Below, piece after piece: positions 17,182 through 50,200 of a stretch of 64,000 nt of DNA; the stretch's first letter is position 1, and every line of letters starts with the position of its first letter. A program made the translations under genes and the position numbers. The stretch lies in IMG/VR virus record IMGVR_UViG_3300036770_004723, positions 222,585 through 286,584 of that record; one strand, given 5' to 3'. Under the pieces are notes generated by a model. It was given only the letters and a program-made list of their open reading frames with translations, did not search any database and had not been told where the DNA came from.

Positions 17182-17820
17182 TTATCTGATTATAAGATGT
17201 TTTTGGCACAAAGTATGGTCCTGTAGATATGGATGGTGCTTATCTATTGTAATGGCTGTGTTGTCACAAGCAGAACACTTTATTCCTTTATCTTTAGCAT
17301 GTTCTTTATAAATAATTTTGTAAGGCACATATTCATTTTCTAACATAACACAGTTAGATAAAATTCTAGTATAGCCGGATGTTTTAATAGAAAAAGGCTT
17401 TAATCTATCTTCTGATATATCAATACGTTTCATGAAATTTCGAAATTTATTTAAAGCCAGTTCGTCTTGCCTTGAACTGTATGAACCTACAAAAAGAGCT
17501 ACCACAGTATTTTTGTTTGTGGTGTAGTGTGCTATATGGTCATTAAGACATATAACATCCCCCTTAATTATGTTTACTGAACTATCCTCTGATATAAGTA
17601 ACCCATCAGAATGTAACGGTAGCACATATACAAAACCAGTATTATCTATGTGTTTACCTACATTAGGTTTCCAGCCATAGATTTCAACTATTTTACTGTT
17701 CTCTGTGCCTACTACAGGGCCTTTAACTCTGTTTAGTCTTTGACACATATAATGATATCTTAGGCTGGAATAAATTTTATCTGATACTTTAATGTTTCCG
17801 ACAATTTCCAAACTTAACAT
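17182..17820 (-). CDS. putative 2OG-Fe(II) oxygenase-like protein with C-terminal Zn finger
   Basis: KHIDN (HxD), GDVICLNDHIAHYT (distal His); CSAC..LCQKH; AGGTG RBS before 17820. Confidence 0.55.
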   Translation of the reverse strand: MLSLEIVGNIKVSDKIYSSLRYHYMCQRLNRVKGPVVGTENSKIVEIYGWKPNVGKHIDNTGFVYVLPLHSDGLLISEDSSVNIIKGDVICLNDHIAHYTTNKNTVVALFVGSYSSRQDELALNKFRNFMKRIDISEDRLKPFSIKTSGYTRILSNCVMLENEYVPYKIIYKEHAKDKGIKCSACDNTAITIDKHHPYLQDHTLCQKHLIIR

Positions 17821-17830
17821 AGAGACACCT

Positions 17831-17872
17831 AAAGAAAAAGGCAAGAGAATCTCTTGCCTTATATTTACAGTT
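17831..17872 (-). terminator. intrinsic terminator preceded by CTGTAAAT motif
   Basis: AACTGTAAATAT-AAGGCAAGAG-ATT-CTCTTGCCTT-TTTCTTT. Confidence 0.75.
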
Positions 17873-17884
17873 TAATCAAGTACA

Positions 17885-19015
17885 CTAAATTGAATAGTCT
17901 TTGATTAATTCTTCAAGTTTTTTATCAAACATTTTTAAGCAGTTTCGAATCTTTTTGGCTTTTGCCTTAGGTTCGTCTTTAGATGCGAGAATTTGACAAA
18001 CTCTTCGTTTCTTGGCCAAAAGTTTCTCAAGTTCTTCCATCTTGTATAAACTATTCAAAGCATTGAAATGACCTACAGTAGTGTTTTTTGGATCTAGTTC
18101 TCTATATCTGTAGGTTAACCTTAGGTCTTGCGTGTATCTGTTTACAGACATTTTATGTATTTTTACGCAATCGACTTTTAAATCCAATGAATTTGCGCGT
18201 ATTTGCATTGATTGTACAATAGAATTCAATAAACTTAAAAAGTATTTATCTGTGTGTAATTTGCTAAAATCAAACTCTGAATTCTCTAGACCTGAAGCGT
18301 AAACTTCTAGAACTATTTCTTTCGCCGTATTTATGGATGTACGGATAACATGACCTAAAATTGTTAGAATGTTAACCATATCCGTAACAGTATTTGTTGC
18401 GAATAGAGTTTGCGCAGGATCCCAATCTTTCCAATCCGATTTTTGAAGAAACCAGTTAATCACACCTAAATCTTTTACAGATAAAAGCCAACTATTTTCT
18501 ACGACTACCTTACATATTTCCAGTAAAACCTTATAAAATTTTCTAGCTCTGTCAATGAATGCTGCTGTAATAGGCTGTCCTTCATCAATTTTTAAAAAAA
18601 TTGCCATTTCAGCAATTGCCTTTTGTGTATGGCTATTAACGTCGATCAAGCGTTCAAGATCATGAACAAAAAGATTTAATGTGTATAATGCTGACCATGT
18701 TTGTTTTTGTTGTACGCTCGATAATTGCGTCACCAAAAGATTTTTGGACATTCCTTTGAAAAAGGAAACGTTGCTTCCTTCTAAGGTACTAACGACATTA
18801 TTATATAAATTTCCACGTAAACGATAAATACCTACATTCAAGTAATCATCATTTATTAGTGGAAAGCTTAAATCAGTATTTTTCACAGCATCTTCAGTCA
18901 AGTATTTACTATCATACTTGTTAGACATCTCTATAAACAATTTTGAGAAAGATTTAGTTTCGCCTGCACACTTAGCTTTATATGTTTCTTCAAAAACTTT
19001 CAGGAAGATATCCAT
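17885..19015 (-). CDS. hypothetical helical protein
   Basis: 376-aa ORF, GGAG RBS. Confidence 0.8.
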   Translation of the reverse strand: MDIFLKVFEETYKAKCAGETKSFSKLFIEMSNKYDSKYLTEDAVKNTDLSFPLINDDYLNVGIYRLRGNLYNNVVSTLEGSNVSFFKGMSKNLLVTQLSSVQQKQTWSALYTLNLFVHDLERLIDVNSHTQKAIAEMAIFLKIDEGQPITAAFIDRARKFYKVLLEICKVVVENSWLLSVKDLGVINWFLQKSDWKDWDPAQTLFATNTVTDMVNILTILGHVIRTSINTAKEIVLEVYASGLENSEFDFSKLHTDKYFLSLLNSIVQSMQIRANSLDLKVDCVKIHKMSVNRYTQDLRLTYRYRELDPKNTTVGHFNALNSLYKMEELEKLLAKKRRVCQILASKDEPKAKAKKIRNCLKMFDKKLEELIKDYSI

Positions 19016-19554
19016 TATTGGTCTCCGTTTGAACTATCTAAAGGATCTATATAATCTACACCATTAACATGATAAATCTCTTGATTACCAGAAAACCTAG
19101 ATCTATGTTCTGTCCAGCTGTTTATAAGATGTTGGTAATCTGCTCTTGTTCTTAAACGTTTAAATCGTGCCTGATCAATTCTTTGTAAAGCACATGATTT
19201 GTCAGGGAAAATCAAAAATCTTTCTTTAGAGTCTGTATGTTCAATTAAATATACTTTGTCAGTACCGCAAAAACGCTCACTAATTAAATTGAATCCATTA
19301 GGTTTGGCAAGAACATATTCTAATCTATGCGAAACCATATTAGACATTTTAGAATAATCTACGTTGCCGTCTGGTAAATTTAAAAATACATCTAAGGAGT
19401 GAGACTCGACGACGGCTAAGCGATACACAAAGTATGGTATATTATCACTTGTAAACTTCAGATCAAGTTTTGCATAGCCTGAAAATTCTGTTTGAAGAAA
19501 TTCGTAAATGTCTTCCTGTTCATTAAGTAAGGTAGATCTAAAATTAATTAACAT
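19015..19554 (-). CDS. hypothetical protein
   Basis: Coupled ORF. Confidence 0.75.
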   Translation of the reverse strand: MLINFRSTLLNEQEDIYEFLQTEFSGYAKLDLKFTSDNIPYFVYRLAVVESHSLDVFLNLPDGNVDYSKMSNMVSHRLEYVLAKPNGFNLISERFCGTDKVYLIEHTDSKERFLIFPDKSCALQRIDQARFKRLRTRADYQHLINSWTEHRSRFSGNQEIYHVNGVDYIDPLDSSNGDQ

Positions 19555-19555
19555 A

Positions 19556-20029
19556 CTACATTCCTTGTGGTGGAATACGGATTCGGATTTTCAAAGGACC
19601 TTGCATTAAATTGTGTTCATTACTACCAACTTCTTCTGCAAGAAATCCTCTACGTTTTATTTCTTCGATAGTTTGGCGAGGTAATAGAGCTTTACCTTTT
19701 ACTTTTATCACAGGGAAATTTAGCTCCACCCCTTTTTTAAGATCATGAATAAAAGCTTTTTCACGTAACCAAATATCTATTTCAGTCGGCTCAATTTTAA
19801 CTTTAACTTTACTATCTAAATAACTAGATACATCTGATAAAATTGGATCACCTTCATTTTCTTGGTATTCAGCTTTGGAAATCTTATCACCTACTGATTC
19901 AAGTGCCAAAACTATTTTATTGAAAAAGTCGCATTCTTTGCCTGAGATAATATCAGCGTACTCACGGCGATCAATGACGCCGTTTTCATGTAACGCAGAT
20001 GCCATGATTGATCTGTCGTATATTTTCAT
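19556..20029 (-). CDS. hypothetical protein
   Basis: AGGTG RBS. Confidence 0.75.
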   Translation of the reverse strand: MKIYDRSIMASALHENGVIDRREYADIISGKECDFFNKIVLALESVGDKISKAEYQENEGDPILSDVSSYLDSKVKVKIEPTEIDIWLREKAFIHDLKKGVELNFPVIKVKGKALLPRQTIEEIKRRGFLAEEVGSNEHNLMQGPLKIRIRIPPQGM

Positions 20030-20066
20030 ATTCTCACCTATTACATTAGTTAATGTTCACCAATAA

Positions 20067-20084
20067 GCTGGCATTTATGCCAGC
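20067..20084 (-). terminator. hairpin, possible terminator
   Basis: gctggcat-tt-atgccagc in intergenic gap, weak U-tract. Confidence 0.45.
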
Positions 20085-20134
20085 CTATGCTGTCAAAAAT
20101 CGAAGCAACACTGATCTATTTAAATGTTATTCCA

Positions 20135-20785
20135 TTAATCTTTAGAATATTCAGGCTCTACGAGATCTAATTGACCTTCACTAGTAAAGCTTGCTAGTTG
20201 TTCAACAGTTGCCAAGGAAATAGCGTATGATTTACTTGGAATAATAATGAATTGTTCGCCATTACTTTTACGTGCCCAAAGATCAATGTAGTTACCTACT
20301 ACATTCTTATAATCTAAGCCTTCAAAACCTTTTGGTTGTTCAATAGTTAGAACACGCTTAAACTTTACTTTGTCACCGTATTTAGCTAACAGTTGTCTGT
20401 ACTCCAATGATTCGTCATCTAAATCATATTGGTGCTGTACTTCACTATCGATCTCTAACACAAGTTTGTGTGCGCCGCGTTCATTGACAATTGTTTCCAG
20501 TTTTACGATAGGATGTTCAACAATTACAACAGCTAAACTCCAAACGTAAAGTGGTGATTTTGTACCGCGACCTAAGAAAAAAGAAGATAATATACTTGAA
20601 GGATCTTGCTGGTCCCAACCGACACCACTCTTGATCTCGCTTGCTTCAACACTGTCTACATGCAGCATGAAGTTATATAAAGCTTGGCGGTATTGTTGTT
20701 CGGTTTCGTCTTTTAAAGGTTGACGAAAATTACGGCCTGTTGCGCAATTACGCAAACTTTCAAATGTTGGAAAACTCATTGGCAT
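20135..20785 (-). CDS. hypothetical protein
   Basis: ORF track 20135..20866; GAGGG RBS favours MPMSF start at 20785. Confidence 0.75.
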   Translation of the reverse strand: MPMSFPTFESLRNCATGRNFRQPLKDETEQQYRQALYNFMLHVDSVEASEIKSGVGWDQQDPSSILSSFFLGRGTKSPLYVWSLAVVIVEHPIVKLETIVNERGAHKLVLEIDSEVQHQYDLDDESLEYRQLLAKYGDKVKFKRVLTIEQPKGFEGLDYKNVVGNYIDLWARKSNGEQFIIIPSKSYAISLATVEQLASFTSEGQLDLVEPEYSKD

Positions 20786-20795
20786 AATAATTCCC

Positions 20796-21086
20796 TCAGA
20801 TAATTGATTCTGGACTGTCATCAATCCAGATATTAAAATTGTAATCAAGTGATTGGCAGAAAGCACGTTTTTGTTTCATGCCACAATAGATTACACTAAT
20901 GTTTTTACGATCACATAGATCAGTAATATCACTGTTATCATCCGACCCTAAACAATCTTGACGATCATGACGGGCAGTAACTATTACAATGCTATGTCCT
21001 GCCAGTTTCACACTATCAATGAAATTGTCCCATACTTCAGGCATTGCAGTATATGTTTCATCGAAATCTAATGCGATCATTACCAT
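20796..21086 (-). CDS. small HAD-like phosphatase/nucleotidase
   Basis: IALDFDETYT, VTAR and IWIDDSP motifs. Confidence 0.75.
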   Translation of the reverse strand: MVMIALDFDETYTAMPEVWDNFIDSVKLAGHSIVIVTARHDRQDCLGSDDNSDITDLCDRKNISVIYCGMKQKRAFCQSLDYNFNIWIDDSPESII

Positions 21087-21097
21087 AAACTTTTTCC

Positions 21098-21841
21098 TTA
21101 ATTTCTTTTCATTCTACCAAATTGTTGTTGATAGTCACCCATTCTGCATTCGGTTGTATATTCTGTAGTTACACCTTGAACTTTTGGTTGTCCTGATTCA
21201 CCACACTCCACAGAATAATCTACTTCAGTTCTGAGCATTCTTAAATCTGTATTCTTGACTAATGGAACCTCTACACTTATATGCGCAGGAACGGAATTAA
21301 TTCGGTGCCAAGAAGCTAAAATTATTTCATCTTTTGCACAAACTGTTTCAGCTTCTATCCAAAATAACGTATCAATCTTACCCATTAAATAGGCAACTAG
21401 ATCGCATGTAAAAGACTTTTTGTTTTTAGTGTTCCAACCAACAGACATGAACGTAACACGCGACCAATTAATTGTTGTCTTGGATTCAACATACTTGCGT
21501 AATTGCTTCAAACTATTTGGTTTAGATGCTGAATATTTAGGAACTAATATAATCAGATCTTTAGTTCCATATAGTTTGTTAATGTCTAAGCGGTTGAGTA
21601 CACGCACTTCTTTGTTTTCAAAAGCAATAACTGAATCGAAATCAATAAAGTCTGCAATGTCGTCAGCTTGATCATTTTGAAGAGCAGTCCACTGACGTTG
21701 TAATTCATCGGCCATAGCACTAGAAAATGCCTTAGTCGATCTGTTCAGTTTAAGATTATTGGTAAATGTTTGATCAACTAGCCGTTTAATCTGGTTTAAT
21801 ATAAGGGTTTCAAGTTTGTTCATTAACCTACTCCAAGTCAA
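21098..21841 (-). CDS. hypothetical protein
   Basis: ORF in - strand run. Confidence 0.75.
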   Translation of the reverse strand: MTWSRLMNKLETLILNQIKRLVDQTFTNNLKLNRSTKAFSSAMADELQRQWTALQNDQADDIADFIDFDSVIAFENKEVRVLNRLDINKLYGTKDLIILVPKYSASKPNSLKQLRKYVESKTTINWSRVTFMSVGWNTKNKKSFTCDLVAYLMGKIDTLFWIEAETVCAKDEIILASWHRINSVPAHISVEVPLVKNTDLRMLRTEVDYSVECGESGQPKVQGVTTEYTTECRMGDYQQQFGRMKRN

Positions 21842-22037
21842 TACGGTTTGTTTTTTGATCTACAGGCAACGAATATTCAAAATAACCACTTTCATCACAA
21901 CGACCATAACCCGCAGTAGTTAGTTCGCAGATACCTTGACTAAAAGTTGGTTTTTTACCTTGCTTGTACCATTCAATTGCCTGTAATTTATTTTGTTGCC
22001 AAACCTCTTCAGGAATATCGCAGATTGAAAATGTCAT
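21828..22037 (-). CDS. hypothetical protein
   Basis: GAGG RBS. Confidence 0.7.
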   Translation of the reverse strand: MTFSICDIPEEVWQQNKLQAIEWYKQGKKPTFSQGICELTTAGYGRCDESGYFEYSLPVDQKTNRIDLE

Positions 22038-22044
22038 ACATGCC

Positions 22045-23280: not shown

Positions 23281-23282
23281 AT

Positions 23283-23573: not shown

Positions 23574-23578
23574 TGTAA

Positions 23579-25487: not shown

Positions 25488-25488
25488 T

Positions 25489-27531: not shown

Positions 27532-28107
27532 TTAATTTAATACACTAACAGTTTCTATAGGAATCAATTCAAGTGTCTGACTGATACCTACTTCTTTATC
27601 TAATTTTGATTTACCTTTCTGGCTTATCAAAATTTCTCTGCCTAACACCCCAGCAAAAGTTGTTCTTACCTTTAAACCGTTTTCCTCTAACTCCACCAAT
27701 TCATAGGCTTCGAAAACTTTAACGATTAAAATCTGCCTTACTTCACTACTTGAGTCATTGACTAAAGCTTGTCTTCCTTCAGCAGGCTTTAGATCAGTTA
27801 AACATCCTAACACCCCAATTGAGTGTGTTGTTGTTTCGTGGTCTGAAAGTGCGTAATTATAAAAACTTTTTAAATCGCAGGCTTTAACATTAAAGTTCTT
27901 GCAAATTTCATTTATTGTTTTCGCAATTTTTAGAATGTCTTCTGCAAATGAAGACTCTTCTTCATTCATAGACCTATCATCTAGACCTATATCAATTTGC
28001 GTAGGTAAATTCAGTTTCTTTAGCTTTTCTAAAATTTCCGCTTTTTTGATTTCGGCGGCGTCCATGCTTAATGGAACAATACTTTTTAATTTATACAGGC
28101 TTTTCAT
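27532..28107 (-). CDS. hypothetical protein
   Basis: AAGGA RBS, downstream of CTGTAAAT motif. Confidence 0.75.
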   Translation of the reverse strand: MKSLYKLKSIVPLSMDAAEIKKAEILEKLKKLNLPTQIDIGLDDRSMNEEESSFAEDILKIAKTINEICKNFNVKACDLKSFYNYALSDHETTTHSIGVLGCLTDLKPAEGRQALVNDSSSEVRQILIVKVFEAYELVELEENGLKVRTTFAGVLGREILISQKGKSKLDKEVGISQTLELIPIETVSVLN

Positions 28108-28151: not shown

Positions 28152-28159
28152 ATTTACAG
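28152..28159 (-). promoter_or_regulatory. CTGTAAAT late-promoter-like motif
   Basis: AAACTGTAAATA in intergenic gap. Confidence 0.5.
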
Positions 28160-29651: not shown

Positions 29652-29679
29652 AACACAATTCCCTTAACTAATTAAACGT

Positions 29680-29737
29680 ATTATACCAAATTTTGGTAAG
29701 CCAGTAAACACCTAATATTGACACACCTCGTTTAGTT
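29680..29737 (-). promoter_or_regulatory. boxed sigma70-like early promoter (variant box without GATC)
   Basis: AACTAAACGAGGTGTGTCAA-9-TTTACT-17-TATAAT. Confidence 0.8.
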
Positions 29738-29741
29738 GGCT

Positions 29742-30339: not shown

Positions 30340-31377
30340 TTATTTAAAATCTCTTTTAAGAACCAATAAAATATTAGGATCTAATTTAAGTCCTTGAGGC
30401 ACTAAAATATTTTTATAGCAAATCCCTACATGTAGTCTGCAATCGTTGGTTTCGATGTTAAAAATATTATCAAGCAAAAGTGCTGTGTGATCAGGTGCCA
30501 TACTCAACGCAATCTGGTTGAGTAAAATTTCGCGATCTAAATTTTTTAGGTTATGGATTTTGTACGATTTTCCAAGAACACCTGCAATACTTAACAGCAT
30601 ATAACGGAAAGCAGCAATAAAGTCCACATCCAATGTAATGCAGTGACTATTAAACAACTTCTTAAAATCGTAAACTATTAAATTTTCTTCTTTAGCATAA
30701 GAATCTAGCTTTAGATTAAAGCTGTCTTGTATACGTTCAATGTTAGCTACGCTATAAATTTGACTGTAAAATTCTTCACGTCTATACGCATAGAATGGAT
30801 TTTCGTCATCATCAGGTAAATGAGCCTCAGCAATCAAAACTTTAGTGAGTTCTTTTTGTAAGTAACTTGAAATCAAACTTCCTTTGACGCTGTTAATGTT
30901 TCGTATTAAATCAAAACACTGTCTTTCATTTACTTGATCTACTCCGATGCCGTTCTGCCTTAAATAATCCAAAGCAGATTGATCGCGGTAATCATCGACA
31001 TAAATTACATCCGTGATACTTCCAAAATTTACAATTCGTTTAGCACAGTTAGGGCAGGGACTACTCATTACAAAGATAACGAGTTTTTTATAAACACTTA
31101 AATCAAGTGCCTTAAGTTCTGTAAGATTCTTTAACTTATTTAAAGCGTTTTCTTCGGCATGAATAACTGTAGATAATGTTTCACCATTTTTTTCAAATAC
31201 GTGATCTTCCCCACTGGCAACTCCATTACATCCGTCACTTAATATTTGCCAAACTCTCCCTTTTAAATGGCCTACTATAATACTGCCCATTTTCTTTCTT
31301 GTTACTCTAGATCTTTGAGCAGCTGCATACATATCCGGTAAATACGTCAACAACTCTTTATGTTTCTTTAATATCAT
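30340..31377 (-). CDS. dCMP deaminase-like protein with long C-terminal extension
   Basis: GCNG, HAEENA and SPCPNCA Zn motifs, DDYRD; extra ~190 aa. Confidence 0.8.
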   Translation of the reverse strand: MILKKHKELLTYLPDMYAAAQRSRVTRKKMGSIIVGHLKGRVWQILSDGCNGVASGEDHVFEKNGETLSTVIHAEENALNKLKNLTELKALDLSVYKKLVIFVMSSPCPNCAKRIVNFGSITDVIYVDDYRDQSALDYLRQNGIGVDQVNERQCFDLIRNINSVKGSLISSYLQKELTKVLIAEAHLPDDDENPFYAYRREEFYSQIYSVANIERIQDSFNLKLDSYAKEENLIVYDFKKLFNSHCITLDVDFIAAFRYMLLSIAGVLGKSYKIHNLKNLDREILLNQIALSMAPDHTALLLDNIFNIETNDCRLHVGICYKNILVPQGLKLDPNILLVLKRDFK

Positions 31378-31400: not shown

Positions 31401-31751
31401 TTAGGCTATGATTTTAAAATACAAAGGCTTTGTATAGGTTAAAAACCTGAACTTGAAGTAGAGTTCAGTATTTACAGGTAAAGCCTCCGGTTTTTTGGAT
31501 CTAGCTAATTGGGAAATTTCATTTGAGATGGTTAAGGTATCTTTACCTAATAAATCTAATAATGACAACTTAGTGGCCACGTCAAAAGGACTTTTAGTTG
31601 GAGATCCTACAATTCTGTGGAACTCTTGATCTAGGTAATGGTTGTGTAGGGTTTCAACAAGTTTCCCGTGCTGATCTAAAAAACGCAATCTAGCGTCGGA
31701 GTCACCTAAAGTAGGTAGGTCAAATGATAGTTTAAAATTTAACTTTTCCAT
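31401..31751 (-). CDS. hypothetical protein
   Basis: GAGGA RBS. Confidence 0.7.
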   Translation of the reverse strand: MEKLNFKLSFDLPTLGDSDARLRFLDQHGKLVETLHNHYLDQEFHRIVGSPTKSPFDVATKLSLLDLLGKDTLTISNEISQLARSKKPEALPVNTELYFKFRFLTYTKPLYFKIIA

Positions 31752-35210: not shown

Positions 35211-35960
35211 TCATCCTTGAGAAAAGTATTTCTTATCCATTAAATTTGATTCTACTAGCAGACGGTAAGTTTTACCTAAAGAAGGATCGTTTCTTTTTCC
35301 GCCTGAATTCCAATGCTTATTTATGTCCAGTACAAGTTCTTGATTATCTAATTTCTTGAGAAAAGAATTCAAGTCCATTAATTCTAGTTTCGGGTTCAGA
35401 CTACGATTAAGATTTTGTATCCTATAAGAGTCTGCTTCACTTAATTTAAAAGTACCTAGTCTAAGAAAATGCCATACTTGAGAATTTTTCGGAAAATTAA
35501 CGCTTTCACTTATACAGTAGTAAGCAACAGGCATTCCAACAGAAGGATCTGGATTTGCATTTGCTTTATTCAGCATACTAAGTCCATGACAGGTACAAAA
35601 ATCTTTTACATCAGATTTTGCTTTTGGTGCGTCAAAGAAAGTGTCAGGTATGGACTTAAAAGCGTTTTCAAAGTTTTTTGCGGATTCACCTGAAAAATAA
35701 ATCGACTCACCTAAAGAAACTAATTCAGTTTTATCCAGTAAGGATCTTTCTGTGGATCTAAACTTAGGATCGTCATTTAGTACAAAAACTTTTTGGCATA
35801 TAACAGTACTCAAAGGCAGTACATCTGGAATTTTTACACGTAAGCTAGATCCATCCTTTAGGTGAAAGAAAGCAGTGTTGTAGGACAGTGAAGCAAAAGG
35901 TATGATAACACTTTTGTTGAGATATGCAGGTGTGCTTCTATAAGACATGTTACGATACAT
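35211..35960 (-). CDS. hypothetical protein
   Basis: GGAG RBS. Confidence 0.75.
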   Translation of the reverse strand: MYRNMSYRSTPAYLNKSVIIPFASLSYNTAFFHLKDGSSLRVKIPDVLPLSTVICQKVFVLNDDPKFRSTERSLLDKTELVSLGESIYFSGESAKNFENAFKSIPDTFFDAPKAKSDVKDFCTCHGLSMLNKANANPDPSVGMPVAYYCISESVNFPKNSQVWHFLRLGTFKLSEADSYRIQNLNRSLNPKLELMDLNSFLKKLDNQELVLDINKHWNSGGKRNDPSLGKTYRLLVESNLMDKKYFSQG

Positions 35961-35973
35961 GATACGTACTCCG

Positions 35974-36030
35974 AAAACAAGAAAAGGCTAGGAGAAGATA
36001 CTTCTTCTTACTCTAGCCTTGATTTACAGT
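35974..36030 (-). terminator. intrinsic terminator preceded by CTGTAAAT motif
   Basis: ACTGTAAATC-AAGGCTAG..CTAGCCTT-TTCTTGTTTT. Confidence 0.65.
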
Positions 36031-36031
36031 A

Positions 36032-36211
36032 TTAAATGTCATAAGTTTCCACGATCAGATTACCAATTTTCTTAACAACTGAGTAGAAACTTTTCTTCTT
36101 TTTACCTCGACGCAAGGCTTTAGTTCGTGCATCGTTTATACTATTTACTTCGCATATTTCCACAGACTTATGGTTGTGTACTGAAATTAATACTAAGGTA
36201 TGCTGTTTCAT
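36032..36211 (-). CDS. small basic hypothetical protein (59 aa)
   Basis: Manual translation MKQHTLVLISVHNHKSVEICEVNSINDARTKALRRGKKKKSFYS..YDI*. Confidence 0.6.
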   Translation of the reverse strand: MKQHTLVLISVHNHKSVEICEVNSINDARTKALRRGKKKKSFYSVVKKIGNLIVETYDI

Positions 36212-40589: not shown

Positions 40590-40592
40590 ATC

Positions 40593-40907
40593 TTACTCCT
40601 TATTAAATTCTTTGGTAATAATTTCTTGTAGTTTGTACGATAAATCTAAAGCTGTTGGAAAACTTTGCTCGTTACGTTCTGCTTCCAGTTCTTCCATAAG
40701 CTTGTAGTAACTAACTTGATTATCGTATTGCTTAAGCGTTTTATCCAAAACGTTTTTAATTTCTTCGATAAAACGTTTGTTACAGGTTGATTCATATAAA
40801 ATTTCACGTTCTCTTTCACGGAATTTTCGTTCAATCTTTTCAAGACGTAAGTTAAAGTACAAATTTGATAATACAAAACAAATTAAGGCTACGGCAATAT
40901 AAATCAT
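40593..40907 (-). CDS. membrane-anchored coiled-coil protein
   Basis: N-terminal TM; AAGGAG RBS. Confidence 0.75.
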   Translation of the reverse strand: MIYIAVALICFVLSNLYFNLRLEKIERKFREREREILYESTCNKRFIEEIKNVLDKTLKQYDNQVSYYKLMEELEAERNEQSFPTALDLSYKLQEIITKEFNKE

Positions 40908-40923
40908 GAGATTCTCCTTAAGT

Positions 40924-40931
40924 ATTTACAG
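40924..40931 (-). promoter_or_regulatory. CTGTAAAT late-promoter-like motif
   Basis: AACTGTAAATAC directly upstream of RBS. Confidence 0.5.
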
Positions 40932-40997
40932 TTACCTAGATTATTTAAACAATTACCTGTATTGTGTATGCTACAAAGAACATACACTAACAAATAA

Positions 40998-42026: not shown

Positions 42027-42057
42027 AAAAGCTGTCCTTAAAGTTTATCGGATAAAT

Positions 42058-42855: not shown

Positions 42856-42856
42856 T

Positions 42857-44094: not shown

Positions 44095-44107
44095 AAGATT
44101 TTCCTTT

Positions 44108-44137
44108 AAAAAGAAGGTACGTAAATACGTACCTTCT
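44108..44137 (-). terminator. intrinsic terminator
   Basis: AGAAGGTACGTA-TT-TACGTACCTTCT followed by T-run. Confidence 0.75.
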
Positions 44138-44143
44138 ACCAAT

Positions 44144-44263
44144 TTATTTTTTACCTTTAGATTTTTCACGTTCAACTTGCTTACGGCCATCGCGTATTGT
44201 CAGTGCTATACCTACCACACATACCATAGCAAGAACTATAACCACTATTTCAAATGTACTCAT
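44144..44263 (-). CDS. 39-aa single-TM membrane protein
   Basis: AAGGAG RBS; MSTFEIVVIVLAMVCVVGIALTIRDGRKQVEREKSKGKK*. Confidence 0.75.
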   Translation of the reverse strand: MSTFEIVVIVLAMVCVVGIALTIRDGRKQVEREKSKGKK

Positions 44264-44287
44264 AACAATCTCCTTTAAATTGAGATC

Positions 44288-44345
44288 ATTATACTAAAAA
44301 TTTAGGTAGCTGTAAATGGATGTTCTTGACACACCTAGATCAGTT
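44288..44345 (-). promoter_or_regulatory. boxed sigma70-like early promoter
   Basis: AACTGATCTAGGTGTGTCAA-9-TTTACA-17-TATAAT. Confidence 0.85.
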
Positions 44346-44358
44346 CGTTTAATGGTAA

Positions 44359-44393
44359 TAATTATAGGTACTGATTATAAGTACCTATAATTA
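44359..44393. repeat. 14-bp perfect inverted repeat (hairpin)
   Basis: taattataggtact-gattata-agtacctataatta upstream of the promoter box. Confidence 0.75.
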
Positions 44394-44499
44394 AATCACT
44401 AATTCTTTTCTTTAACAGGCTTTACTTGTTTTTTAACAACAAACACTGCGGATAAAGGGATTACTTTTTTAGATAACTGCAAAACAATATTTCCTGATC

Positions 44500-45727: not shown

Positions 45728-45741
45728 TTTTCATTTTTCCC

Positions 45742-45960
45742 TCAAACAGGTCTCAGGTAAGTAAACGTTGGATGTTCTCCGGCTCTGTCACCAACGGCTT
45801 TAGTTGGCTCAAGATTACTTAACTTACTTAAAGTTTTAAGGTACTCACGATCATTATATTCACAATGCACAAGCAAGTCACCTTGAATTAAGGTCTCAGT
45901 ACTTTCTACAAAACGTACCTTCTTTTTAAGGCCGTTGATTTTCATTTTAAATTCTGACAT
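45742..45960 (-). CDS. hypothetical protein
   Basis: GAGGA RBS. Confidence 0.7.
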   Translation of the reverse strand: MSEFKMKINGLKKKVRFVESTETLIQGDLLVHCEYNDREYLKTLSKLSNLEPTKAVGDRAGEHPTFTYLRPV

Positions 45961-45963
45961 AGC

Positions 45964-46152
45964 TTAATCCTCTACTTTAGTCAAAAACATTATTTTTGTT
46001 TGCCCTACTGTCAAGGATTTACCTTGCTGTAATTTAGATAGTTCTCGTTTCGCTGCATCACTTAATCGAAACTTTTTAATCACTTCGCTGCGCGTCATTG
46101 TTGTTGAAGTGTAAGGAGTACAGATTTTAAACACATCGTTAAGTACTGTCAT
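45964..46152 (-). CDS. small hypothetical protein (family with 56385..56603)
   Basis: ELSKLQQGKSLTV resembles QISDLQVGQTLSL. Confidence 0.65.
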   Translation of the reverse strand: MTVLNDVFKICTPYTSTTMTRSEVIKKFRLSDAAKRELSKLQQGKSLTVGQTKIMFLTKVED

Positions 46153-46433
46153 TTACGGTATTCCTTTGCCAGATCTGCAATAAGTTTTTCAATTTGGGCA
46201 TTTAACGCATTTATCTTTGTTGTGGTTGAGGCCAGAGAATTTGAAATCGAGTCAATACGTTTTGAATCAAGATCCAGATCTAATTGATCTGAACGGGCTT
46301 TGATTCTTTGATTTAATTGCTTTTTCAATTCTCGGGCACTTATTCCTTTAGCGCCCTTTTCTGTACTGACTAAGTTATTAACAAAGTAAATATCTTCCAG
46401 TGCAAGTACGTGAGTGTAATCTTTTGCTTTCAT
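46149..46433 (-). CDS. coiled-coil hypothetical protein
   Basis: ATGA-coupled. Confidence 0.7.
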   Translation of the reverse strand: MKAKDYTHVLALEDIYFVNNLVSTEKGAKGISARELKKQLNQRIKARSDQLDLDLDSKRIDSISNSLASTTTKINALNAQIEKLIADLAKEYRK

Positions 46434-46642
46434 TGCGGTTTTCCTTGATCTTTTAATCGACGTTTTGCGACATTGATCTCAATCATAATCTTTTCGTTTA
46501 CAGGACGTTTAGGGTAATCCATTATAAAAATACCTTGATCTGAGATCGTCGCGTGCTGAGATTTAGTACCTAGTGAAACTGTTACCGGAAATTTTTTACA
46601 GTGTTCACGTATTTCAGTATAAAGTTTATCGATCTTACTCAT
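46430..46642 (-). CDS. hypothetical protein
   Basis: ATGA-coupled. Confidence 0.7.
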   Translation of the reverse strand: MSKIDKLYTEIREHCKKFPVTVSLGTKSQHATISDQGIFIMDYPKRPVNEKIMIEINVAKRRLKDQGKPQ

Positions 46643-46971
46643 TTGGTTTCTTCCTCTGCGTTTTCAACCAATTTCAAACAACTAGGTTCATACTCAAACA
46701 GCATACCTAATGCAGAATGTTCTGTACGTGTATCTACTGTGATACGTACCTTGTAAGGATAACGGCCTCCATTATAGATACCGCGATCTGCTTCATTTAA
46801 TTTTTCAAGAACTCCGTACATATTCGTTCCGGCAATTTGAACTGTTTTTCCTTTGTTTTGCTCAAACCAGTTTCGATGTTCGTCTGTTGGCCCACCTTCA
46901 TACCGGATAAATTGTTCTTGTACTGCACGAGGCATACCAAGGATCAAACTGGCTGTAGTAGAATCAATCAT
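46639..46971 (-). CDS. hypothetical protein (SH3-like pattern)
   Basis: ATGA-coupled; GKTV.I..G..YPYKV..YEP..L. Confidence 0.7.
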   Translation of the reverse strand: MIDSTTASLILGMPRAVQEQFIRYEGGPTDEHRNWFEQNKGKTVQIAGTNMYGVLEKLNEADRGIYNGGRYPYKVRITVDTRTEHSALGMLFEYEPSCLKLVENAEEETK

Positions 46972-47462
46972 TTGTTTATTCCTTCTATTGCGGTCAAAAG
47001 TTCACGGATTTGACTTAATTCGGTAGATTGGTCTGTTGGTACTTGCAAAATTTGAAGTTTATTTTCGATTTGGTCTGTTAGTTCTGCTGTTACCTCAGAC
47101 CGTTCTTTGCCGTAACTTTCCAGTAATTCAAGGCCGTAGTATTTACCTACTGTAAAAAATAGTTCTTCTTCTTTAATGTCCCGTACAACATTTTTACGTA
47201 CATCTTTTAAGATCTTGTACGTACACTGTTCTTCTATATGTGAAAGTACAAGATCTGCCTGATACATAAGTTTTGGATTTTCAAAACTTTTTACATCTGA
47301 ACATTTAGTGGTTACTATTACTACTTCAATGTCGGTTGATACAGTACTAAAGTCAGAACGTTCCAAAAATCTAACAGAATAAATCTTTGCAAGTTTTTGA
47401 CTTAAAGCCGCAATATTATCATTTGCTGCTGGCGATTCGGGAAAAATTAAAAGAATTTTCAT
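46968..47462 (-). CDS. hypothetical protein with shared C-terminal DQI..DQS motif
   Basis: ORF track 46968..47552; AGGAG RBS favours start 47462. Confidence 0.7.
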   Translation of the reverse strand: MKILLIFPESPAANDNIAALSQKLAKIYSVRFLERSDFSTVSTDIEVVIVTTKCSDVKSFENPKLMYQADLVLSHIEEQCTYKILKDVRKNVVRDIKEEELFFTVGKYYGLELLESYGKERSEVTAELTDQIENKLQILQVPTDQSTELSQIRELLTAIEGINK

Positions 47463-47472
47463 TTGCTTACTC

Positions 47473-47955
47473 CTAGTCTTCGAATACCCAATTTTCAGAA
47501 CATAAATCACATAAGAGCATAAATCTAGGTAAGCTGTGAATACTTGGATCATCAGGTAACTGGTTCCATAAAGTTTCCATTAATTTTGCAGCTTGCTGGC
47601 CAGCTTTCATGGATCTTTCTGTGAACGGCACTGTTGAAATGTTTTTATTAAAATTTTCAATTTCTTCGATTATTTCACTTAAGTAACTGTGTTTATTTTG
47701 GTATTCAGGTAAGTTTGAGGATACCACAATCAAGGCATACCACCAACTTAATGGATTTTGAATTTTGATTGTACCACGTACCATGTCACGGATTAATTTT
47801 CTACCTGCATAAGCAAAAACAATTTCAGTCATTGGAAGAAAAGTTTCTTCTCCCGCTTTATCTACACTGTACCCAGTTACACCGTTATAAGTGATTGGTT
47901 CATTGCCTAAAGCACGGAAAAATTTGTTACCTTTGGCAAAAATATAAAGTGACAT
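47473..47955 (-). CDS. hypothetical protein
   Basis: AAGGA RBS. Confidence 0.75.
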   Translation of the reverse strand: MSLYIFAKGNKFFRALGNEPITYNGVTGYSVDKAGEETFLPMTEIVFAYAGRKLIRDMVRGTIKIQNPLSWWYALIVVSSNLPEYQNKHSYLSEIIEEIENFNKNISTVPFTERSMKAGQQAAKLMETLWNQLPDDPSIHSLPRFMLLCDLCSENWVFED

Positions 47956-47970
47956 ATTAAAATCCTTTAA

Positions 47971-48456
47971 TTAGTTTGGTAATACGTAAACATAAACTTT
48001 TTTAACAGAGTCTTCCATAAATTCTTTATAAAATGTATTTATGTACCCACAAGCATTTAGTGTGGCAAGAAAGCTATTTAGATAAGTAACATTGTGTGTT
48101 TGGTCAAAAACATCTGTTTGCTTAAGGTAGATATAATTGCCATCCTCTAGCATTAATCCGGCTAAACACTTAATGTAATTAGATACGACCAGAATAAAGC
48201 AATCTTCATCCTGATTATTTAAATCAGATGCCAATTGCGTATAACCTGAAGGCTCACGTACATAAAGATTTAAAATTTCTCTACCATTATCCACAGATCT
48301 CGATATTGCAAACTTAATAGAAAAGTATTGCAGATTAATTTTTATCTCCATGAGATAATTTTCAGTAGCTAAAAGGTAGTTTACGCTATCACAGTTTAAA
48401 TAGCGGAGGCAAATATGCTCAATAAGAGACATTTTAATCTCCTTGGCTTTCAGCAA
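47971..48456 (-). CDS. hypothetical protein
   Basis: ORF; likely start at MSLIEH after AAGGAG. Confidence 0.7.
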   Translation of the reverse strand: MLKAKEIKMSLIEHICLRYLNCDSVNYLLATENYLMEIKINLQYFSIKFAISRSVDNGREILNLYVREPSGYTQLASDLNNQDEDCFILVVSNYIKCLAGLMLEDGNYIYLKQTDVFDQTHNVTYLNSFLATLNACGYINTFYKEFMEDSVKKVYVYVLPN

Positions 48457-48952
48457 ATTTCAACAGTGCTAACTTAGCCAGTTCTTCTGGAAATCTCAAA
48501 CTAATTTTTACGATCTCACCTTCGATAATAGTTGTATCTTCATCTAATTTTAAAGCAAGTGCTAGTGTGAACTTACCGAAAAATTCTACTATGGCACGAT
48601 AAGACCAGTTTGGTTTTTTACGGGCTTCGATAATACACTGCATAACTATTTCATTTAGAAAAGTATAGCAGTTTGGAGTTTCACCTATAATAGTTTTATA
48701 GATAAAATCTTTTTCGGCCGTTGACCCAGTAGATTCTTTACAATAAAGAACACGGACATGTTTAGCAAACACATTTTTTATCTGATTTGTTGAACTGTCC
48801 TTTTTGCAGCTTTTAAACAGATCGTTTGCTATCTCACTGCAAAGTTTGTCGTCAAGTTTTCCGTCCTTACTGTACAACGATAAAAATACACTGTTAGCAA
48901 ATAAGGTAAATGTTTTTTGTGCGCAAGCAAAAGCCTTAGATTGATGTTGCAT
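48434..48952 (-). CDS. hypothetical protein
   Basis: AGGAG RBS. Confidence 0.75.
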   Translation of the reverse strand: MQHQSKAFACAQKTFTLFANSVFLSLYSKDGKLDDKLCSEIANDLFKSCKKDSSTNQIKNVFAKHVRVLYCKESTGSTAEKDFIYKTIIGETPNCYTFLNEIVMQCIIEARKKPNWSYRAIVEFFGKFTLALALKLDEDTTIIEGEIVKISLRFPEELAKLALLKFAESQGD

Positions 48953-48953
48953 G

Positions 48954-49403
48954 TTAATCTCCTAATTTTTTAATTAAACTGTTTAACGTTTGCTTACAAG
49001 AAGATAAACCTTGATATGTAGGCAAACCTTGATCGTAACAAAAGCTATCAAGTTCTTTATCACTTAAAGAGTTAAAGTCTTTTGCTGTTTCTGAGTAAGG
49101 CTGCAACAAGAATCTTACGGCACTATTGACATCGCTGTTAGTTACAGCCATAGTTTTCTTGATCTGTTGTTCCAGATTTTTCAAAGCAAAGTAAATGCCC
49201 AAATCAACTTCAGGGACACCTAACGTAACTGGCTTACACAGGCTTTGGAAAGTATGGCCTGTAGGATAAAGTTCTTGAAAGTACTGATGAAATTGTTCAG
49301 CATTATCACAGAACACACTTTCAACTTCATGCAAACTTTCATCCATAAAGCCGAGACTGTTTTGAAAGTCATGAATTTTGTAAATCATAAAAAATATTTT
49401 CAT
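48954..49403 (-). CDS. hypothetical protein
   Basis: Coupled ORF. Confidence 0.75.
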   Translation of the reverse strand: MKIFFMIYKIHDFQNSLGFMDESLHEVESVFCDNAEQFHQYFQELYPTGHTFQSLCKPVTLGVPEVDLGIYFALKNLEQQIKKTMAVTNSDVNSAVRFLLQPYSETAKDFNSLSDKELDSFCYDQGLPTYQGLSSCKQTLNSLIKKLGD

Positions 49404-49603
49404 TAGTGTGTTTCCTTATTAGCTTGAGCTACAGCCGCAGAAAGTTTGTCAGTAAACACTAGCCAATCTAACCAATCGTTGAATGGCATCATACGGCCGT
49501 AGTCACTGAATTCGAAATTTAACCGATCATACATTTCTCTAAGTGTTTCACCTTGAGCATTTTTGAAGATTTTGTTTGAGTTACTTTCTGTAGACGTATT
49601 CAT
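49403..49603 (-). CDS. small hypothetical protein, first gene after boxed promoter
   Basis: GAGG RBS. Confidence 0.7.
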   Translation of the reverse strand: MNTSTESNSNKIFKNAQGETLREMYDRLNFEFSDYGRMMPFNDWLDWLVFTDKLSAAVAQANKETH

Positions 49604-49632
49604 GATATTTACCTCTTTGTTAAGATGTGTAT

Positions 49633-49690
49633 ATTATAACAAAAATCTGTAGGTCAGTAAATCACTGTTTTTGACACACCTAGATCAGTT
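49633..49690 (-). promoter_or_regulatory. boxed sigma70-like early promoter
   Basis: AACTGATCTAGGTGTGTCAA-9-TTTACT-17-TATAAT. Confidence 0.85.
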
Positions 49691-49900
49691 ATAGGTAAAA
49701 CAAGTAACGAACTTCTCAATGGTTCCGTACCCAAATTCTCTATAAAGATCTTGCACAGTATAGCCAAACTTTTCTATTTTTATTTGTTTAATTTGCTTAC
49801 TGTTTTCCAACATATATAGAAGTGAAGACAAACACTTTAAATCATCTATAAGGCAGTGGTTAATTTCATCACCATTTGTAAGCCATAGTACCTTTAACAT
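49685..49900 (-). CDS. hypothetical protein (stop codon lies in promoter box)
   Basis: GAGG RBS; ends AAC TGA within box. Confidence 0.7.
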   Translation of the reverse strand: MLKVLWLTNGDEINHCLIDDLKCLSSLLYMLENSKQIKQIKIEKFGYTVQDLYREFGYGTIEKFVTCFTYN

Positions 49901-49925
49901 ATTGACCTCAAAAACTTTTCAGCTG

Positions 49926-50165
49926 TTATAATGTTGTACTACATTCGTGACACACAATTTGTTTATTGTGTTGTATACTAAGTTGATTCAATTGATCTTC
50001 AGTGTAAGGAATTGATGACACCTCTACTACGTTAAAAACTTCTTTTTCTTTTCCTTCCGTGTTAACGTATTCATCTAAATAGCCTGCTCTATATTCAATG
50101 GTTAATTCAGGCAGTAGGTTAATATTTTTAATTTTTGTGTTTGTCATAGTATGTTTCCAAAACAA
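49926..50165 (-). CDS. hypothetical protein (likely start 50147)
   Basis: ORF in - strand run. Confidence 0.6.
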   Translation of the reverse strand: MFWKHTMTNTKIKNINLLPELTIEYRAGYLDEYVNTEGKEKEVFNVVEVSSIPYTEDQLNQLSIQHNKQIVCHECSTTL

Positions 50166-50200
50166 AAAGGCGGAATATTCCGCCTTTAATGTATTTACAG
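50161..50200 (-). terminator. intrinsic terminator preceded by CTGTAAAT motif
   Basis: CTGTAAATACATT-AAAGGCGGAA-TA-TTCCGCCTTT-TTGTT. Confidence 0.7.

What the first reader, a model, noticed from the sequence alone, without database searches (positions are those of the whole stretch)
17818..50200. Promoter-inside-terminator switch: CTGTAAAT placed so transcription would start within the hairpin 5' arm
Seen three times (17831-17872, 35974-36030, 50161-50200): motif, then 1-5 nt, then a GC-rich stem beginning AAGGC, U-tract, RBS and ATG. Inference: read-through early RNA forms the full hairpin and terminates, whereas RNA started from the motif lacks part of the left arm and escapes, so one compact element both insulates and times the downstream gene. 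Established analogy: T4 genes e, soc, 49 and I-TevI use late promoters inside RBS-occluding hairpins. A terminator version repeated across a genome is less familiar. The alternative is that the motif drives tiny terminated RNAs or is an RNA antitermination signal.
Basis: partly seen in the sequence, partly recalled or inferred. Interest (0 to 1): 0.65.

Follow-up and report, generated by a model that had tools for sequence, protein, structure and literature searches.

The report
Phage promoter fused onto terminator hairpins
In an uncultured 287-kb jumbo phage, the clade's own promoter box CTGTAAATA sits directly against ordinary terminator hairpins, so that at two of the three named sites RNA started there should begin inside the stem and escape termination; the layout recurs in related phages but no RNA data exist to prove it.

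Summary
All three sites read, on the minus strand: stop codon, CTGTAAAT, 1-5 nt, AAGGC-stem hairpin, U-tract, RBS, ATG. A weak fourth copy lies at 31440-31477.

CTGTAAAT(A) is a genuine promoter-like signal:
- 50 copies in the 286,584-bp genome, 19 of them in the 4.6% that is intergenic.
- One-base variants are almost never intergenic.
- It usually lies 37-53 nt before a start codon.
- It is enriched 4-29-fold in seven related jumbo phages.
- GenBank annotates it in phage Lu11 as a 'putative middle/late promoter'.

It precedes replication genes and a sigma-factor gene, so I class it as middle, not late.

Across 145 sites in 8 genomes the 7th/8th nt after the motif are pyrimidine/purine. This predicts the start at the 8th nt.
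- Sites 1 and 2: the start falls 6-7 nt into the left arm. Folding energy drops from -15/-16 to -3.3/-5.9 kcal/mol, with no stem left at the U-tract.
- Site 3: the start falls at the stem base, leaving a -11.4 kcal/mol hairpin plus U-tract.

Relatives carry at least 12 modules in the 0-3 nt register. At least 8 others have fully transcribed terminators.

The parts
17863..17870 (-). Site 1: CTGTAAAT promoter box (the consensus A follows it). It lies 14 nt after the stop of the 376-aa gene 17885-19015.
17855..17855 (-). Site 1: predicted transcription start (8th nt after the motif, C|A). It is the 6th base of the 10-nt left arm.
   Evidence: inferred, not measured
17831..17860 (-). Site 1: intrinsic terminator. 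The 10-bp stem with 3-nt loop is at 17838-17860 (-13.4 kcal/mol) and the T-tract at 17831-17837. RNA from the predicted start folds at only -3.3 kcal/mol.
17818..17830 (-). Site 1: RBS AGGTG and ATG of the 212-aa gene 17182-17820 (phrog_28827, function unknown).
36022..36029 (-). Site 2: CTGTAAAT promoter box, 2 nt after the stop of the 59-aa ORF 36032-36211.
36014..36014 (-). Site 2: predicted start (T|A), the 7th base of the left arm.
   Evidence: inferred
35974..36020 (-). Site 2: imperfect 37-nt terminator hairpin at 35984-36020 plus T-tract at 35974-35983. The full-length RNA folds at -16.1 kcal/mol; from the predicted start no stem abuts the U-tract.
35958..35972 (-). Site 2: RBS GGAG and ATG of the 249-aa gene 35211-35960 (no family match).
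50193..50200 (-). Site 3: CTGTAAAT promoter box, 2 nt after the stop of the 316-aa gene 50203-51153.
50157..50187 (-). Site 3: terminator AAAGGCGG-AATATT-CCGCCTTT at 50166-50187 plus T-tract. The predicted start (50185, A|A) is the third stem base, so promoter-born RNA keeps a -11.4 kcal/mol hairpin and the U-tract.
49685..50147 (-). Site 3: two small genes (73 aa and 71 aa). They lie between this terminator and the next early promoter (about 49610-49680) and have no other recognisable promoter.
31440..31477 (-). Weak fourth copy: motif 31470-31477, then a 7-bp AT-rich stem at 31447-31468 and GTTTTT. It lies inside the 3' end of ORF 31401-31751, upstream of the deaminase-like gene 30340-31377.
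   Evidence: fold no better than shuffles
28152..28159 (-). CTGTAAAT promoter without a hairpin, 52 nt before the ATG of gene 27532-28107. Similar copies lie at 9679-9686 (39 nt before the ATG at 9647) and 40924-40931 (24 nt before the ATG at 40907).
58122..58234 (-). Early sigma70-type promoter: GTGTCAA upstream element, a -35-like box, then TGATATAAT. It probably feeds the transcription unit that ends at the site 3 terminator. Sister copies lie in intergenic regions 29652-29741, 44264-44499, 49604-49684 and 59629-59780, and near 63890-63950.

Best explanation
Each site is a compact transcription-unit boundary. An ordinary intrinsic terminator stops host-RNA-polymerase transcription arriving from upstream early promoters. 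The phage clade's own second-class (middle) promoter, a -10-like box AAA-CTGTAAAT-A with no -35 element, is butted directly against the 5' side of the stem.

Transcription from this promoter is predicted to begin at the 8th nt after CTGTAAAT.
- At sites 1 and 2 (and the weak fourth copy) that start lies 6-7 nt into the left arm. Promoter-born RNA lacks the GC-rich base of the stem, cannot form a hairpin next to the U-tract, and runs on into the downstream gene. RNA from upstream forms the whole hairpin and terminates.
- At site 3 the start falls at the base of the stem. The hairpin is then a complete 5'-terminal terminator, and escape by truncation is not predicted. Those transcripts must get through by leakiness or by a polymerase state that ignores the terminator, or they largely end as RNAs of about 25 nt.

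Shown: the anatomy, the non-random motif, its conservation across the clade, the recurrence of the layout, and the folding energies.

Inferred: that the motif is a promoter, the position of the start, the time class, and termination in vivo.
For: Motif as promoter:
- 19 of 50 copies are intergenic, where 4.6% of the genome is intergenic. Three of the one-base variants tested have no intergenic copy and the rest have 1-8.
- The motif lies 37-53 nt before start codons of RNase H, an exonuclease, portal, SSB, a sigma factor, clamp loader and DNA polymerase.
- It is enriched in related phages: Y3 41 copies against 7 in the control, Lu11 48/6, HRDY3 31/7, JA11 33/5, Yen9-02 32/5, Alexandra 29/1, Yoloswag 40/8.
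- Lu11's GenBank record annotates CTGTAAATGGTGAGTA upstream of its SSB gene as a 'putative middle/late promoter'.

Predicted start:
- Among 122 hairpin-free sites, the 8th nt is a purine in 99 (P = 2.6e-7) and the 7th nt a pyrimidine in 73 (P = 1.3e-5).
- Among 23 sites with a hairpin 0-3 nt after the motif, the 8th nt is a purine in 21 and the 7th nt is T in 15.
- Hairpins without a T-tract cluster at gaps 0-3 and again at 7-9, that is, exactly at the predicted 5' end.

Escape from the terminator:
- Site 1 folds at -15.0 kcal/mol full length and -3.3 from the predicted start. Site 2 folds at -16.1 and -5.9, with no stem left at the U-tract.
- The same holds for JA11 14448, 23748 and 29740 and for HRDY3 151560.

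Recurrence:
- T-tract hairpins after the motif have gaps 0,0,0,0,1,2,2,2,3,5,11,14,17,20,21. Nine of 15 are at most 3 (binomial P = 3.7e-4 against a uniform distribution over 0-21).
- Three further uncultured clade members carry 0-3 nt modules (L128, L136, L139).
- JA29 keeps two modules 100% identical within flanks that are 89-92% identical.

Host polymerase: group 2.2 jumbo phages lack their own RNA polymerase and encode sigma factors (PMC7824862). Host-type intrinsic terminators are therefore relevant.

Context: at site 3 the two genes after the terminator have no other promoter before the next early promoter.
Against: - No RNA data exist. The genome comes from a subsurface metagenome, and only DNA runs hold it.
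- Site 3 keeps a -11.4 kcal/mol hairpin plus U-tract from the predicted start.
- Clade members also have complete terminators after the motif: the L151/L152 family (gap 6), Yen9-02 31559 (gap 5), Y3 34954 and 209409 (gaps 12 and 14), and five at gaps 11-21. Some other way past a terminator must therefore exist and could apply everywhere.
- The skew towards small gaps could reflect genome compaction and sharing of the A-tract rather than selection for a start inside the arm.
- The opposite order, terminator then motif 4-26 nt later, is about equally common in the strict count of five genomes (11 against 8). It achieves the same insulation without any trick.
- The factor that reads the motif is unidentified. 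No gp55 homologue was found.
- In this genome the sigma-factor gene itself sits behind a terminator plus this motif.
Confidence: 0.5

Rival explanations
1. Promoter-proximal terminator with phase-specific read-through. The hairpin is (or might as well be) fully transcribed, and motif-born transcripts pass because the polymerase in the middle phase is termination-resistant. That resistance could come from a phage antiterminator, a sigma or co-activator still bound at +25 to +30, or simply leaky terminators. Terminators then matter only for early, unmodified polymerase, and the order of promoter and terminator is neutral.
For: - Complete terminators lie between the motif and the next gene at site 3, in the L151/L152 family, at Y3 34954 and 209409, and at gaps 11-21. 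Those genes have no other promoter.
- In the window, early promoter 44264-44499 is followed by a 39-aa ORF, then a terminator, then a 299-aa gene with no promoter of its own. Read-through of terminators is therefore needed elsewhere too.
Against: - No antiterminator was identified, and none was searched for systematically.
- It does not explain why 60% of T-tract hairpins begin within 3 nt of the motif while the pyrimidine/purine start pair is preserved inside the stem.
Confidence: 0.25
2. Compaction by-product with no switch. Promoter and terminator are independent boundary elements squeezed together in a gene-dense accessory region. The promoter's A-rich 3' edge doubles as the terminator's A-tract, and its complement (TATTTACAG) gives a T-rich tail that makes the terminator bidirectional. 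Any escape from termination is incidental.
For: - Terminators in this genome are typically symmetric AAAGGC...GCCTTT and are called on both strands.
- Intergenic lengths are 55-71 nt at the three sites, against at least 100 nt where the terminator precedes the motif.
- Both orders occur.
Against: - If motif-born RNA terminated efficiently, the downstream genes at these sites would have no expression route.
- The layout arose repeatedly with unrelated stem sequences in phages of different hosts. It is perfectly conserved between JA11 and JA29.
Confidence: 0.15
3. The motif acts in RNA. It could be a binding site for an antiterminator protein next to the terminator's left arm (like RAT sites of BglG/SacY-type systems), or a processing site, rather than a promoter.
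For: The motif abuts the left arm at several terminators.
Against: - Most functional copies (122 of 145) have no adjacent hairpin.
- They sit at a fixed distance from start codons and carry a pyrimidine/purine start signature.
- In several places the terminator lies upstream of the motif.
- No Rfam family matches the window.
Confidence: 0.04

Closest known systems
T4 late promoters inside RBS-occluding hairpins (genes e, soc, 49, I-TevI); recalled from my own knowledge, not retrieved here
   Same: A phage-specific, -10-only promoter (TATAAATA in T4; TGTAAATA here, one base different) is placed so that its transcripts start inside a hairpin that longer, earlier transcripts form in full. RNA structure therefore depends on which promoter was used.
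   Different: - In T4 the hairpin hides the ribosome-binding site (translational control). Here the RBS lies outside the stem, beyond the U-tract, and the hairpin is a transcription terminator.
- No gp55 homologue was found.
- The genes served are replication and accessory genes, not late genes.
'Putative middle/late promoter' annotated in Pseudomonas phage Lu11 (GenBank NC_017972)
   Same: The same core CTGTAAAT lies upstream of the SSB gene. Lu11 carries the same clade-specific sigma70-like factor, at 40% identity.
   Different: The annotation is a motif prediction only. No start site, factor or relation to terminators was found in the papers I could read. The Lu11 genome note itself was not held.
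Lambda PR'-tR' with Q antitermination (promoter followed by a terminator); recalled from my own knowledge
   Same: A promoter is followed closely by an intrinsic terminator, with the genes beyond it. This is the layout at site 3 and in the clade modules with gaps of 5-21 nt.
   Different: - Lambda's terminator lies about 190 nt downstream and yields a stable short RNA.
- Passage in lambda needs Q loaded at the promoter, and no Q-like protein or binding element was identified here.
- At sites 1 and 2 the terminator overlaps the start itself.
5'-terminal stabilising stem-loops (the ompA type); recalled from my own knowledge
   Same: In relatives, hairpins without U-tracts begin exactly at the predicted 5' end (gaps 7-9). 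The site 3 hairpin would be 5'-terminal.
   Different: - Sites 1-3 carry U-tracts and are canonical terminators.
- At sites 1 and 2 the promoter-born RNA keeps no stable 5' stem.

Membership tests
Intrinsic (Rho-independent) terminator | GC-rich stem, short loop, then a U-tract directly 3' of the stem | tested here: met
   - Site 1: 10 bp, 3-nt loop, then TTTTTCTTT.
- Site 2: 37-nt imperfect hairpin, then TTTTCTTGTTTT.
- Site 3: 9 bp, 4-nt loop, then TTTTTGTTTT.

Intrinsic (Rho-independent) terminator | RNA 3' ends at the U-tract in vivo or in vitro | not testable with these tools
   No RNA runs hold this genome.
Sigma-dependent, -10-only phage promoter (T4-late-like) | Conserved box, oriented with the genes, enriched in intergenic DNA, at a fixed distance from start codons | tested here: met
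Sigma-dependent, -10-only phage promoter (T4-late-like) | Conserved across related genomes upstream of orthologous genes | tested here: met
   - The motif lies upstream of the sigma-factor and SSB genes in Y3, and of SSB in Lu11.
- In JA11 a copy at 187408 lies 41 nt before the sigma-factor gene start at 187449.
- It is enriched in 7 relatives.
- PaBG and NCTB are exceptions: 3 and 14 copies, little above their controls.
Sigma-dependent, -10-only phage promoter (T4-late-like) | Mapped primary 5' ends a fixed distance downstream | not testable with these tools
   There is only a sequence signature: pyrimidine/purine at the 7th/8th nt.
Sigma-dependent, -10-only phage promoter (T4-late-like) | Cognate factor (gp55-type or other sigma) encoded by the phage | tested here: inconclusive
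   - No match to T4 gp55, phrog_234 or phrog_12791.
- One sigma70-like protein of 342 aa is present.
- A homologue of PaBG gp112, a doubtful second sigma, is also present. It has no Pfam or PDB match.
T4-type late-promoter-in-hairpin translational switch | The hairpin sequesters the Shine-Dalgarno sequence or start codon of the downstream gene | tested here: not met
   The RBS and ATG lie 3' of the U-tract, outside the stems, at all three sites.
T4-type late-promoter-in-hairpin translational switch | The promoter start lies inside the hairpin's 5' arm | tested here: inconclusive
   By the predicted start this is met at sites 1 and 2 and not at site 3. The start itself is inferred.
Promoter-proximal terminator with dedicated antitermination (lambda Q type) | A complete terminator is transcribed from the promoter, and a dedicated antiterminator is encoded | not tested
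   A complete terminator is predicted only at site 3. No search for antiterminator proteins was made.
Known structured RNA families (Rfam) | Covariance-model match at gathering score | tested here: not met
   No matches in the 64-kb window.

The most novel reading that the evidence does not exclude
A clade of jumbo phages that use host RNA polymerase has evolved a modular 'terminator with an internal start'. This is a 35-45-nt element in which the phage-specific promoter box abuts the stem, so that the start lies in the left arm. It ends every transcript from upstream while launching a terminator-blind transcript of its own. The element is used repeatedly, with unrelated stem sequences, as the standard boundary between early accessory genes and middle-phase genes.
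Probability: 0.4. Interest if true: 0.65.

Novelty: new variant of a known kind. Interest (0 to 1): 0.55.

Why it matters
If confirmed, this would be a transcriptional counterpart of the classic T4 'late promoter inside a hairpin' translational switches. One 40-nt element would insulate a gene from upstream transcription and restart it under a different temporal programme.

- It would explain how very gene-dense accessory regions of jumbo phages are divided into timed units.
- It would give the first functional handle on the CTGTAAATA promoter class, which is shared by Lu11-, Y3-, JA11- and HRDY3-like phages and whose recognition factor is unknown.
- It would supply a compact insulating-promoter part for synthetic biology.

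The analysis also yields a three-class promoter map for an uncultured phage: early sigma70-type, CTGTAAATA, and ATAATTTATA.

Tried and rejected
- Megablast of 12 kb of the window against the phage collection: no match.
- Searches for relatives of the ORFan genes flanking the three sites, in IMG/VR and in JGI metagenomes: none found. Orthologous-site conservation and covariation could not be tested for this genome.
- Sequencing-run search: only DNA contig runs of one subsurface study hold the sequence, and none is RNA. Read laying was therefore not used, since contigs cannot show RNA ends.
- Literature: no paper held describes CTGTAAAT(A) in jumbo phages, or a start site inside a terminator.
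  - The PA5oct paper reports only sigma70-like promoters.
  - The Lu11 genome note was not held.
- T4 gp55 by BLAST and two PHROG profiles: no hit in the genome.
- The idea that CTGTAAAT is an upstream element with a -10 box beginning at the conserved T-A 7-8 nt downstream: rejected, because there is no T enrichment where position -7 would fall.
- The + strand copy at 44310: not a promoter of this class. Its complement TTTACA is the -35 box of an early minus-strand promoter.
- IMG/VR pattern hits with gaps of 4-5 and 10-13 nt, and several with 6-9 nt: they lie in contigs without motif enrichment, so I treat them as chance neighbours of ordinary terminators.
- JA11 against JA29: the modules are identical, so there is no covariation information.
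- The search for homologous proteins, structure prediction and complex prediction were not used. They would not bear on the claim.

Full report
**What the window is.** The window is the last 64 kb of a single-contig virus record of 286,584 bp and 34.6% G+C. It is rated complete and was assembled from a subsurface metagenome.
- From 4,951 to the end, essentially all genes are on the minus strand. They are small and mostly without family matches.
- A 342-aa sigma70-like protein (phrog_17569) places the phage in the jumbo-phage group of Pseudomonas phages Lu11, PaBG and HRDY3, Erwinia phages Y3, Alexandra and Yoloswag, Dickeya phage JA11 and Yersinia phage fHe-Yen9-02, at 39-45% identity.
- According to PMC7824862, Lu11, PaBG and phage NCTB belong to subgroup 2.2 of group 2. 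Group 2 phages have no RNA polymerase of their own but encode sigma factors. Host-type intrinsic terminators are therefore relevant signals.

Read on the minus strand, each of the three places is: stop codon of the upstream gene, CTGTAAAT, 1-5 nt, a hairpin beginning AAGGC, a T-tract, an RBS and an ATG. Exact coordinates are in the parts list.
- The full-length RNAs fold far better than shuffles (z = -3.3, -3.3 and -4.5).
- A fourth, weak copy lies at 31440-31477.
- 'AAGGC' is not special to these sites. Most terminators of this genome are symmetric AAAGGC...GCCTTT hairpins.

**The motif is a real, clade-wide promoter-like signal.**
- In the genome, 19 of 50 CTGTAAAT copies are intergenic, although only 4.6% of the DNA is intergenic.
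- Three of the one-base variants tested have no intergenic copy, and the others have 1-8.
- The extended consensus is A-(A/T)-A-CTGTAAAT-A, with no -35 element. The motif usually starts 37-53 nt before a start codon.
- Downstream genes include RNase H, an exonuclease, the portal protein, SSB, the sigma-like factor, clamp loader, DNA polymerase and an endonuclease VII-like protein.
- The same 8-mer is 4-29 times more frequent than its reversed control in Y3, Lu11, HRDY3, JA11, Yen9-02, Alexandra and Yoloswag.
- It sits before the sigma-factor and SSB genes of Y3.
- In Lu11's GenBank record, CTGTAAATGGTGAGTA before the SSB gene is annotated 'putative middle/late promoter'.

**The genome has two other promoter classes.**
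- Fourteen near-identical sigma70-type promoters lie in front of minus-strand gene arrays, six of them in the window. Each has a -35-like box, 17 nt, then TGnTATAAT, preceded by a conserved AACTGATC...GTGTGTCAA element.
- An ATAATTTATA motif precedes the tail sheath, a PAAR protein, a head protein and other large plus-strand genes.
- I therefore read CTGTAAATA as the middle class, not late.
- Which factor reads it is open. No gp55 homologue was found. The sigma-like gene itself lies behind a terminator plus this motif.

**Where transcription should start.** I collected 145 motif copies in eight genomes that are followed by an RBS and an open frame.
- In the 122 copies without an adjacent hairpin, the 8th nt after the motif is a purine in 99 (background 59%, P = 2.6e-7). 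The 7th nt is a pyrimidine in 73 (P = 1.3e-5).
- There is no T where a -7 position would fall if this T-A pair were the beginning of a -10 box.
- This is the usual pyrimidine(-1)/purine(+1) start signature. It puts TAAATA at -12 to -7.
- Independent support: hairpins without T-tracts that follow the motif cluster at gaps of 7-9 nt, exactly at the predicted 5' end.
- In the 23 sites with a hairpin 0-3 nt after the motif, the signature is kept inside the stem. The 8th nt is a purine in 21 and the 7th nt is T in 15.

**Consequence for the three sites.**
- Site 1: the start is the sixth base of the ten-base left arm. The fold falls from -15.0 to -3.3 kcal/mol.
- Site 2: the start is the seventh base of the arm. 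The fold falls from -16.1 to -5.9 kcal/mol, with no stem next to the U-tract.
- Site 3: the extra 3-4 nt of spacing put the start on the third stem base. The RNA keeps a -11.4 kcal/mol hairpin directly followed by the U-tract. The two small genes behind it (73 and 71 aa) have no other promoter before the next early promoter, so those transcripts must pass a complete terminator in some other way.

**Recurrence in relatives.** The layout is not peculiar to this genome.
- JA11 has at least four terminator modules with a gap of 0-3 nt (14448, 23748, 29740, 195948), plus hairpins without good T-tracts at 7477, 20753 and 243551.
- HRDY3 has two (145123, 151560). Lu11 has candidates at 114217 and 154406.
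- The stems are unrelated in sequence.
- T-tract hairpins between the motif and the next start codon have gaps 0,0,0,0,1,2,2,2,3,5,11,14,17,20,21. Nine of 15 are at most 3 (P = 3.7e-4 against a uniform spread).
- With a strict terminator caller, a start 0-3 nt after a random intergenic position is expected at 0.5-1% of positions.
- Pattern scans of IMG/VR found three more motif-rich jumbo contigs with 0-3 nt modules (L128, L136, L139).
- Hits at 4-5 and 10-13 nt lay in contigs without motif enrichment and are probably chance.
- JA29 keeps two JA11 modules unchanged in flanks that differ by 8-11%.

**What limits the claim.**
- The L151/L152 family is a clear clade member, with 9 and 7 motif copies per locus. 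It has the stem starting 6 nt after the motif, which is a complete 5'-terminal terminator.
- Yen9-02 31559 has a gap of 5. Y3 34954 and 209409 have gaps of 12 and 14. Five cases have gaps of 11-21.
- Complete terminators between this promoter and its gene are thus tolerated. Leakiness or a termination-resistant polymerase must therefore exist, and it could make the truncation trick unnecessary.
- The opposite order, terminator then motif 4-26 nt later, is about as common in the strict count of five genomes (11 against 8). It achieves the same insulation.
- The skew to small gaps may partly reflect compaction. Intergenic regions are 55-71 nt at these sites, against at least 100 nt where the order is reversed.
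- Nothing here measures RNA.

**Comparison with known systems.**
- The closest functional precedent is the T4 set of late promoters inside hairpins (e, soc, 49, I-TevI; from my own knowledge). The motif differs from T4's TATAAATA by one base.
- The defining feature of those T4 switches, occlusion of the RBS, is not met here. The hairpin is a terminator.
- Site 3 and the wider-gap modules resemble promoter-proximal terminators of the lambda PR'-tR' kind.
- No Rfam family matches the window.
- I found no description of a start site placed inside a terminator in the papers searched.

**Verdict.**
It is geometrically sound for two of three sites and for a dozen modules in relatives. It is not general, the time class was mislabelled, and it is untested by RNA data.
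- It is a new variant of a known kind, of moderate interest.

Noticed in passing
window 29652-29741, 44264-44499, 49604-49684, 58122-58234, 59629-59780 and about 63890-63950; also genome positions 104, 81822, 95919, 96089, 96802, 105412 and 107415: Fourteen copies of a roughly 70-nt early-promoter cassette on the minus strand: AACTGATCnnnGTGTGTCAAA, then about 15 nt, a -35-like box, 17 nt, and TGnTATAAT. The conserved element at about -45 to -65 has no obvious counterpart. It may be an UP-like element or a factor-binding site.
   Followed up: partly
window 44310-44317 (+): The only plus-strand CTGTAAAT in the window is not a promoter of this class. Its complement supplies TTTACA, the -35 box of an early minus-strand promoter (TTTACA, 17 nt, TATAAT).
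   Followed up: yes
window 44095-44300 (-): An early promoter drives only a 39-aa ORF and then meets a strong terminator (44112-44137). Directly behind that lies a 299-aa gene that has no promoter of its own. This looks like an attenuator or leader-peptide layout.
   Followed up: no
genome 22000, 138875, 162625, 191820, 198978 and 213348 (outside the window; loci L002, L007, L009-L011): A third intergenic motif, (T)ATAATTTATA, lies upstream of the tail sheath, a PAAR protein, a head protein and other large genes. It is a candidate late promoter. At 15078/15092 and 120547/120218 it sits back-to-back with CTGTAAATA in divergent regions.
   Followed up: partly
relatives: Y3 202080 and 226508; Lu11 240983 and 271829; HRDY3 48953: Hairpins without U-tracts begin exactly at the predicted transcription start (7-9 nt after the motif). 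This fits 5'-terminal stabilising stem-loops.
   Followed up: partly
window 53742-53863 and 54179-54246 (-): A 38-nt repeat, TTGCTAATAGACATTTTGGTAAGTGTCTATTGTCGATT, lies in two neighbouring intergenic regions. It contains a small hairpin.
   Followed up: no
window 52854-53018 (-): A direct repeat, GACTTGCTGAGGAATTT (two full copies, then GAC), lies immediately before the start codon of the gene ending at 52853.
   Followed up: no
window 30340-31377, 55326-56354, 5531-6676 and 8547-9647 (-): Accessory enzymes in the early array: a deaminase-like protein (dCMP/APOBEC-type zinc motif), a radical SAM protein, a DHH/DHHA1 phosphoesterase, and a protein with a weak DNA-methylase match.
   Followed up: no
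genome 53-168 against 286469-286584: The two ends of the contig share a stretch of about 116 nt that matches imperfectly (roughly 80% identity, estimated from the alignment score). It is another copy of the early-promoter cassette, not an exact terminal repeat.
   Followed up: partly
window 17864-17891 (+) and 50193-50225 (+): On the opposite strand, the complement of the motif gives TTTACA followed 16-18 nt later by TAAATT. These are sigma70-like antisense promoters on paper. In this AT-rich DNA they are probably chance.
   Followed up: no
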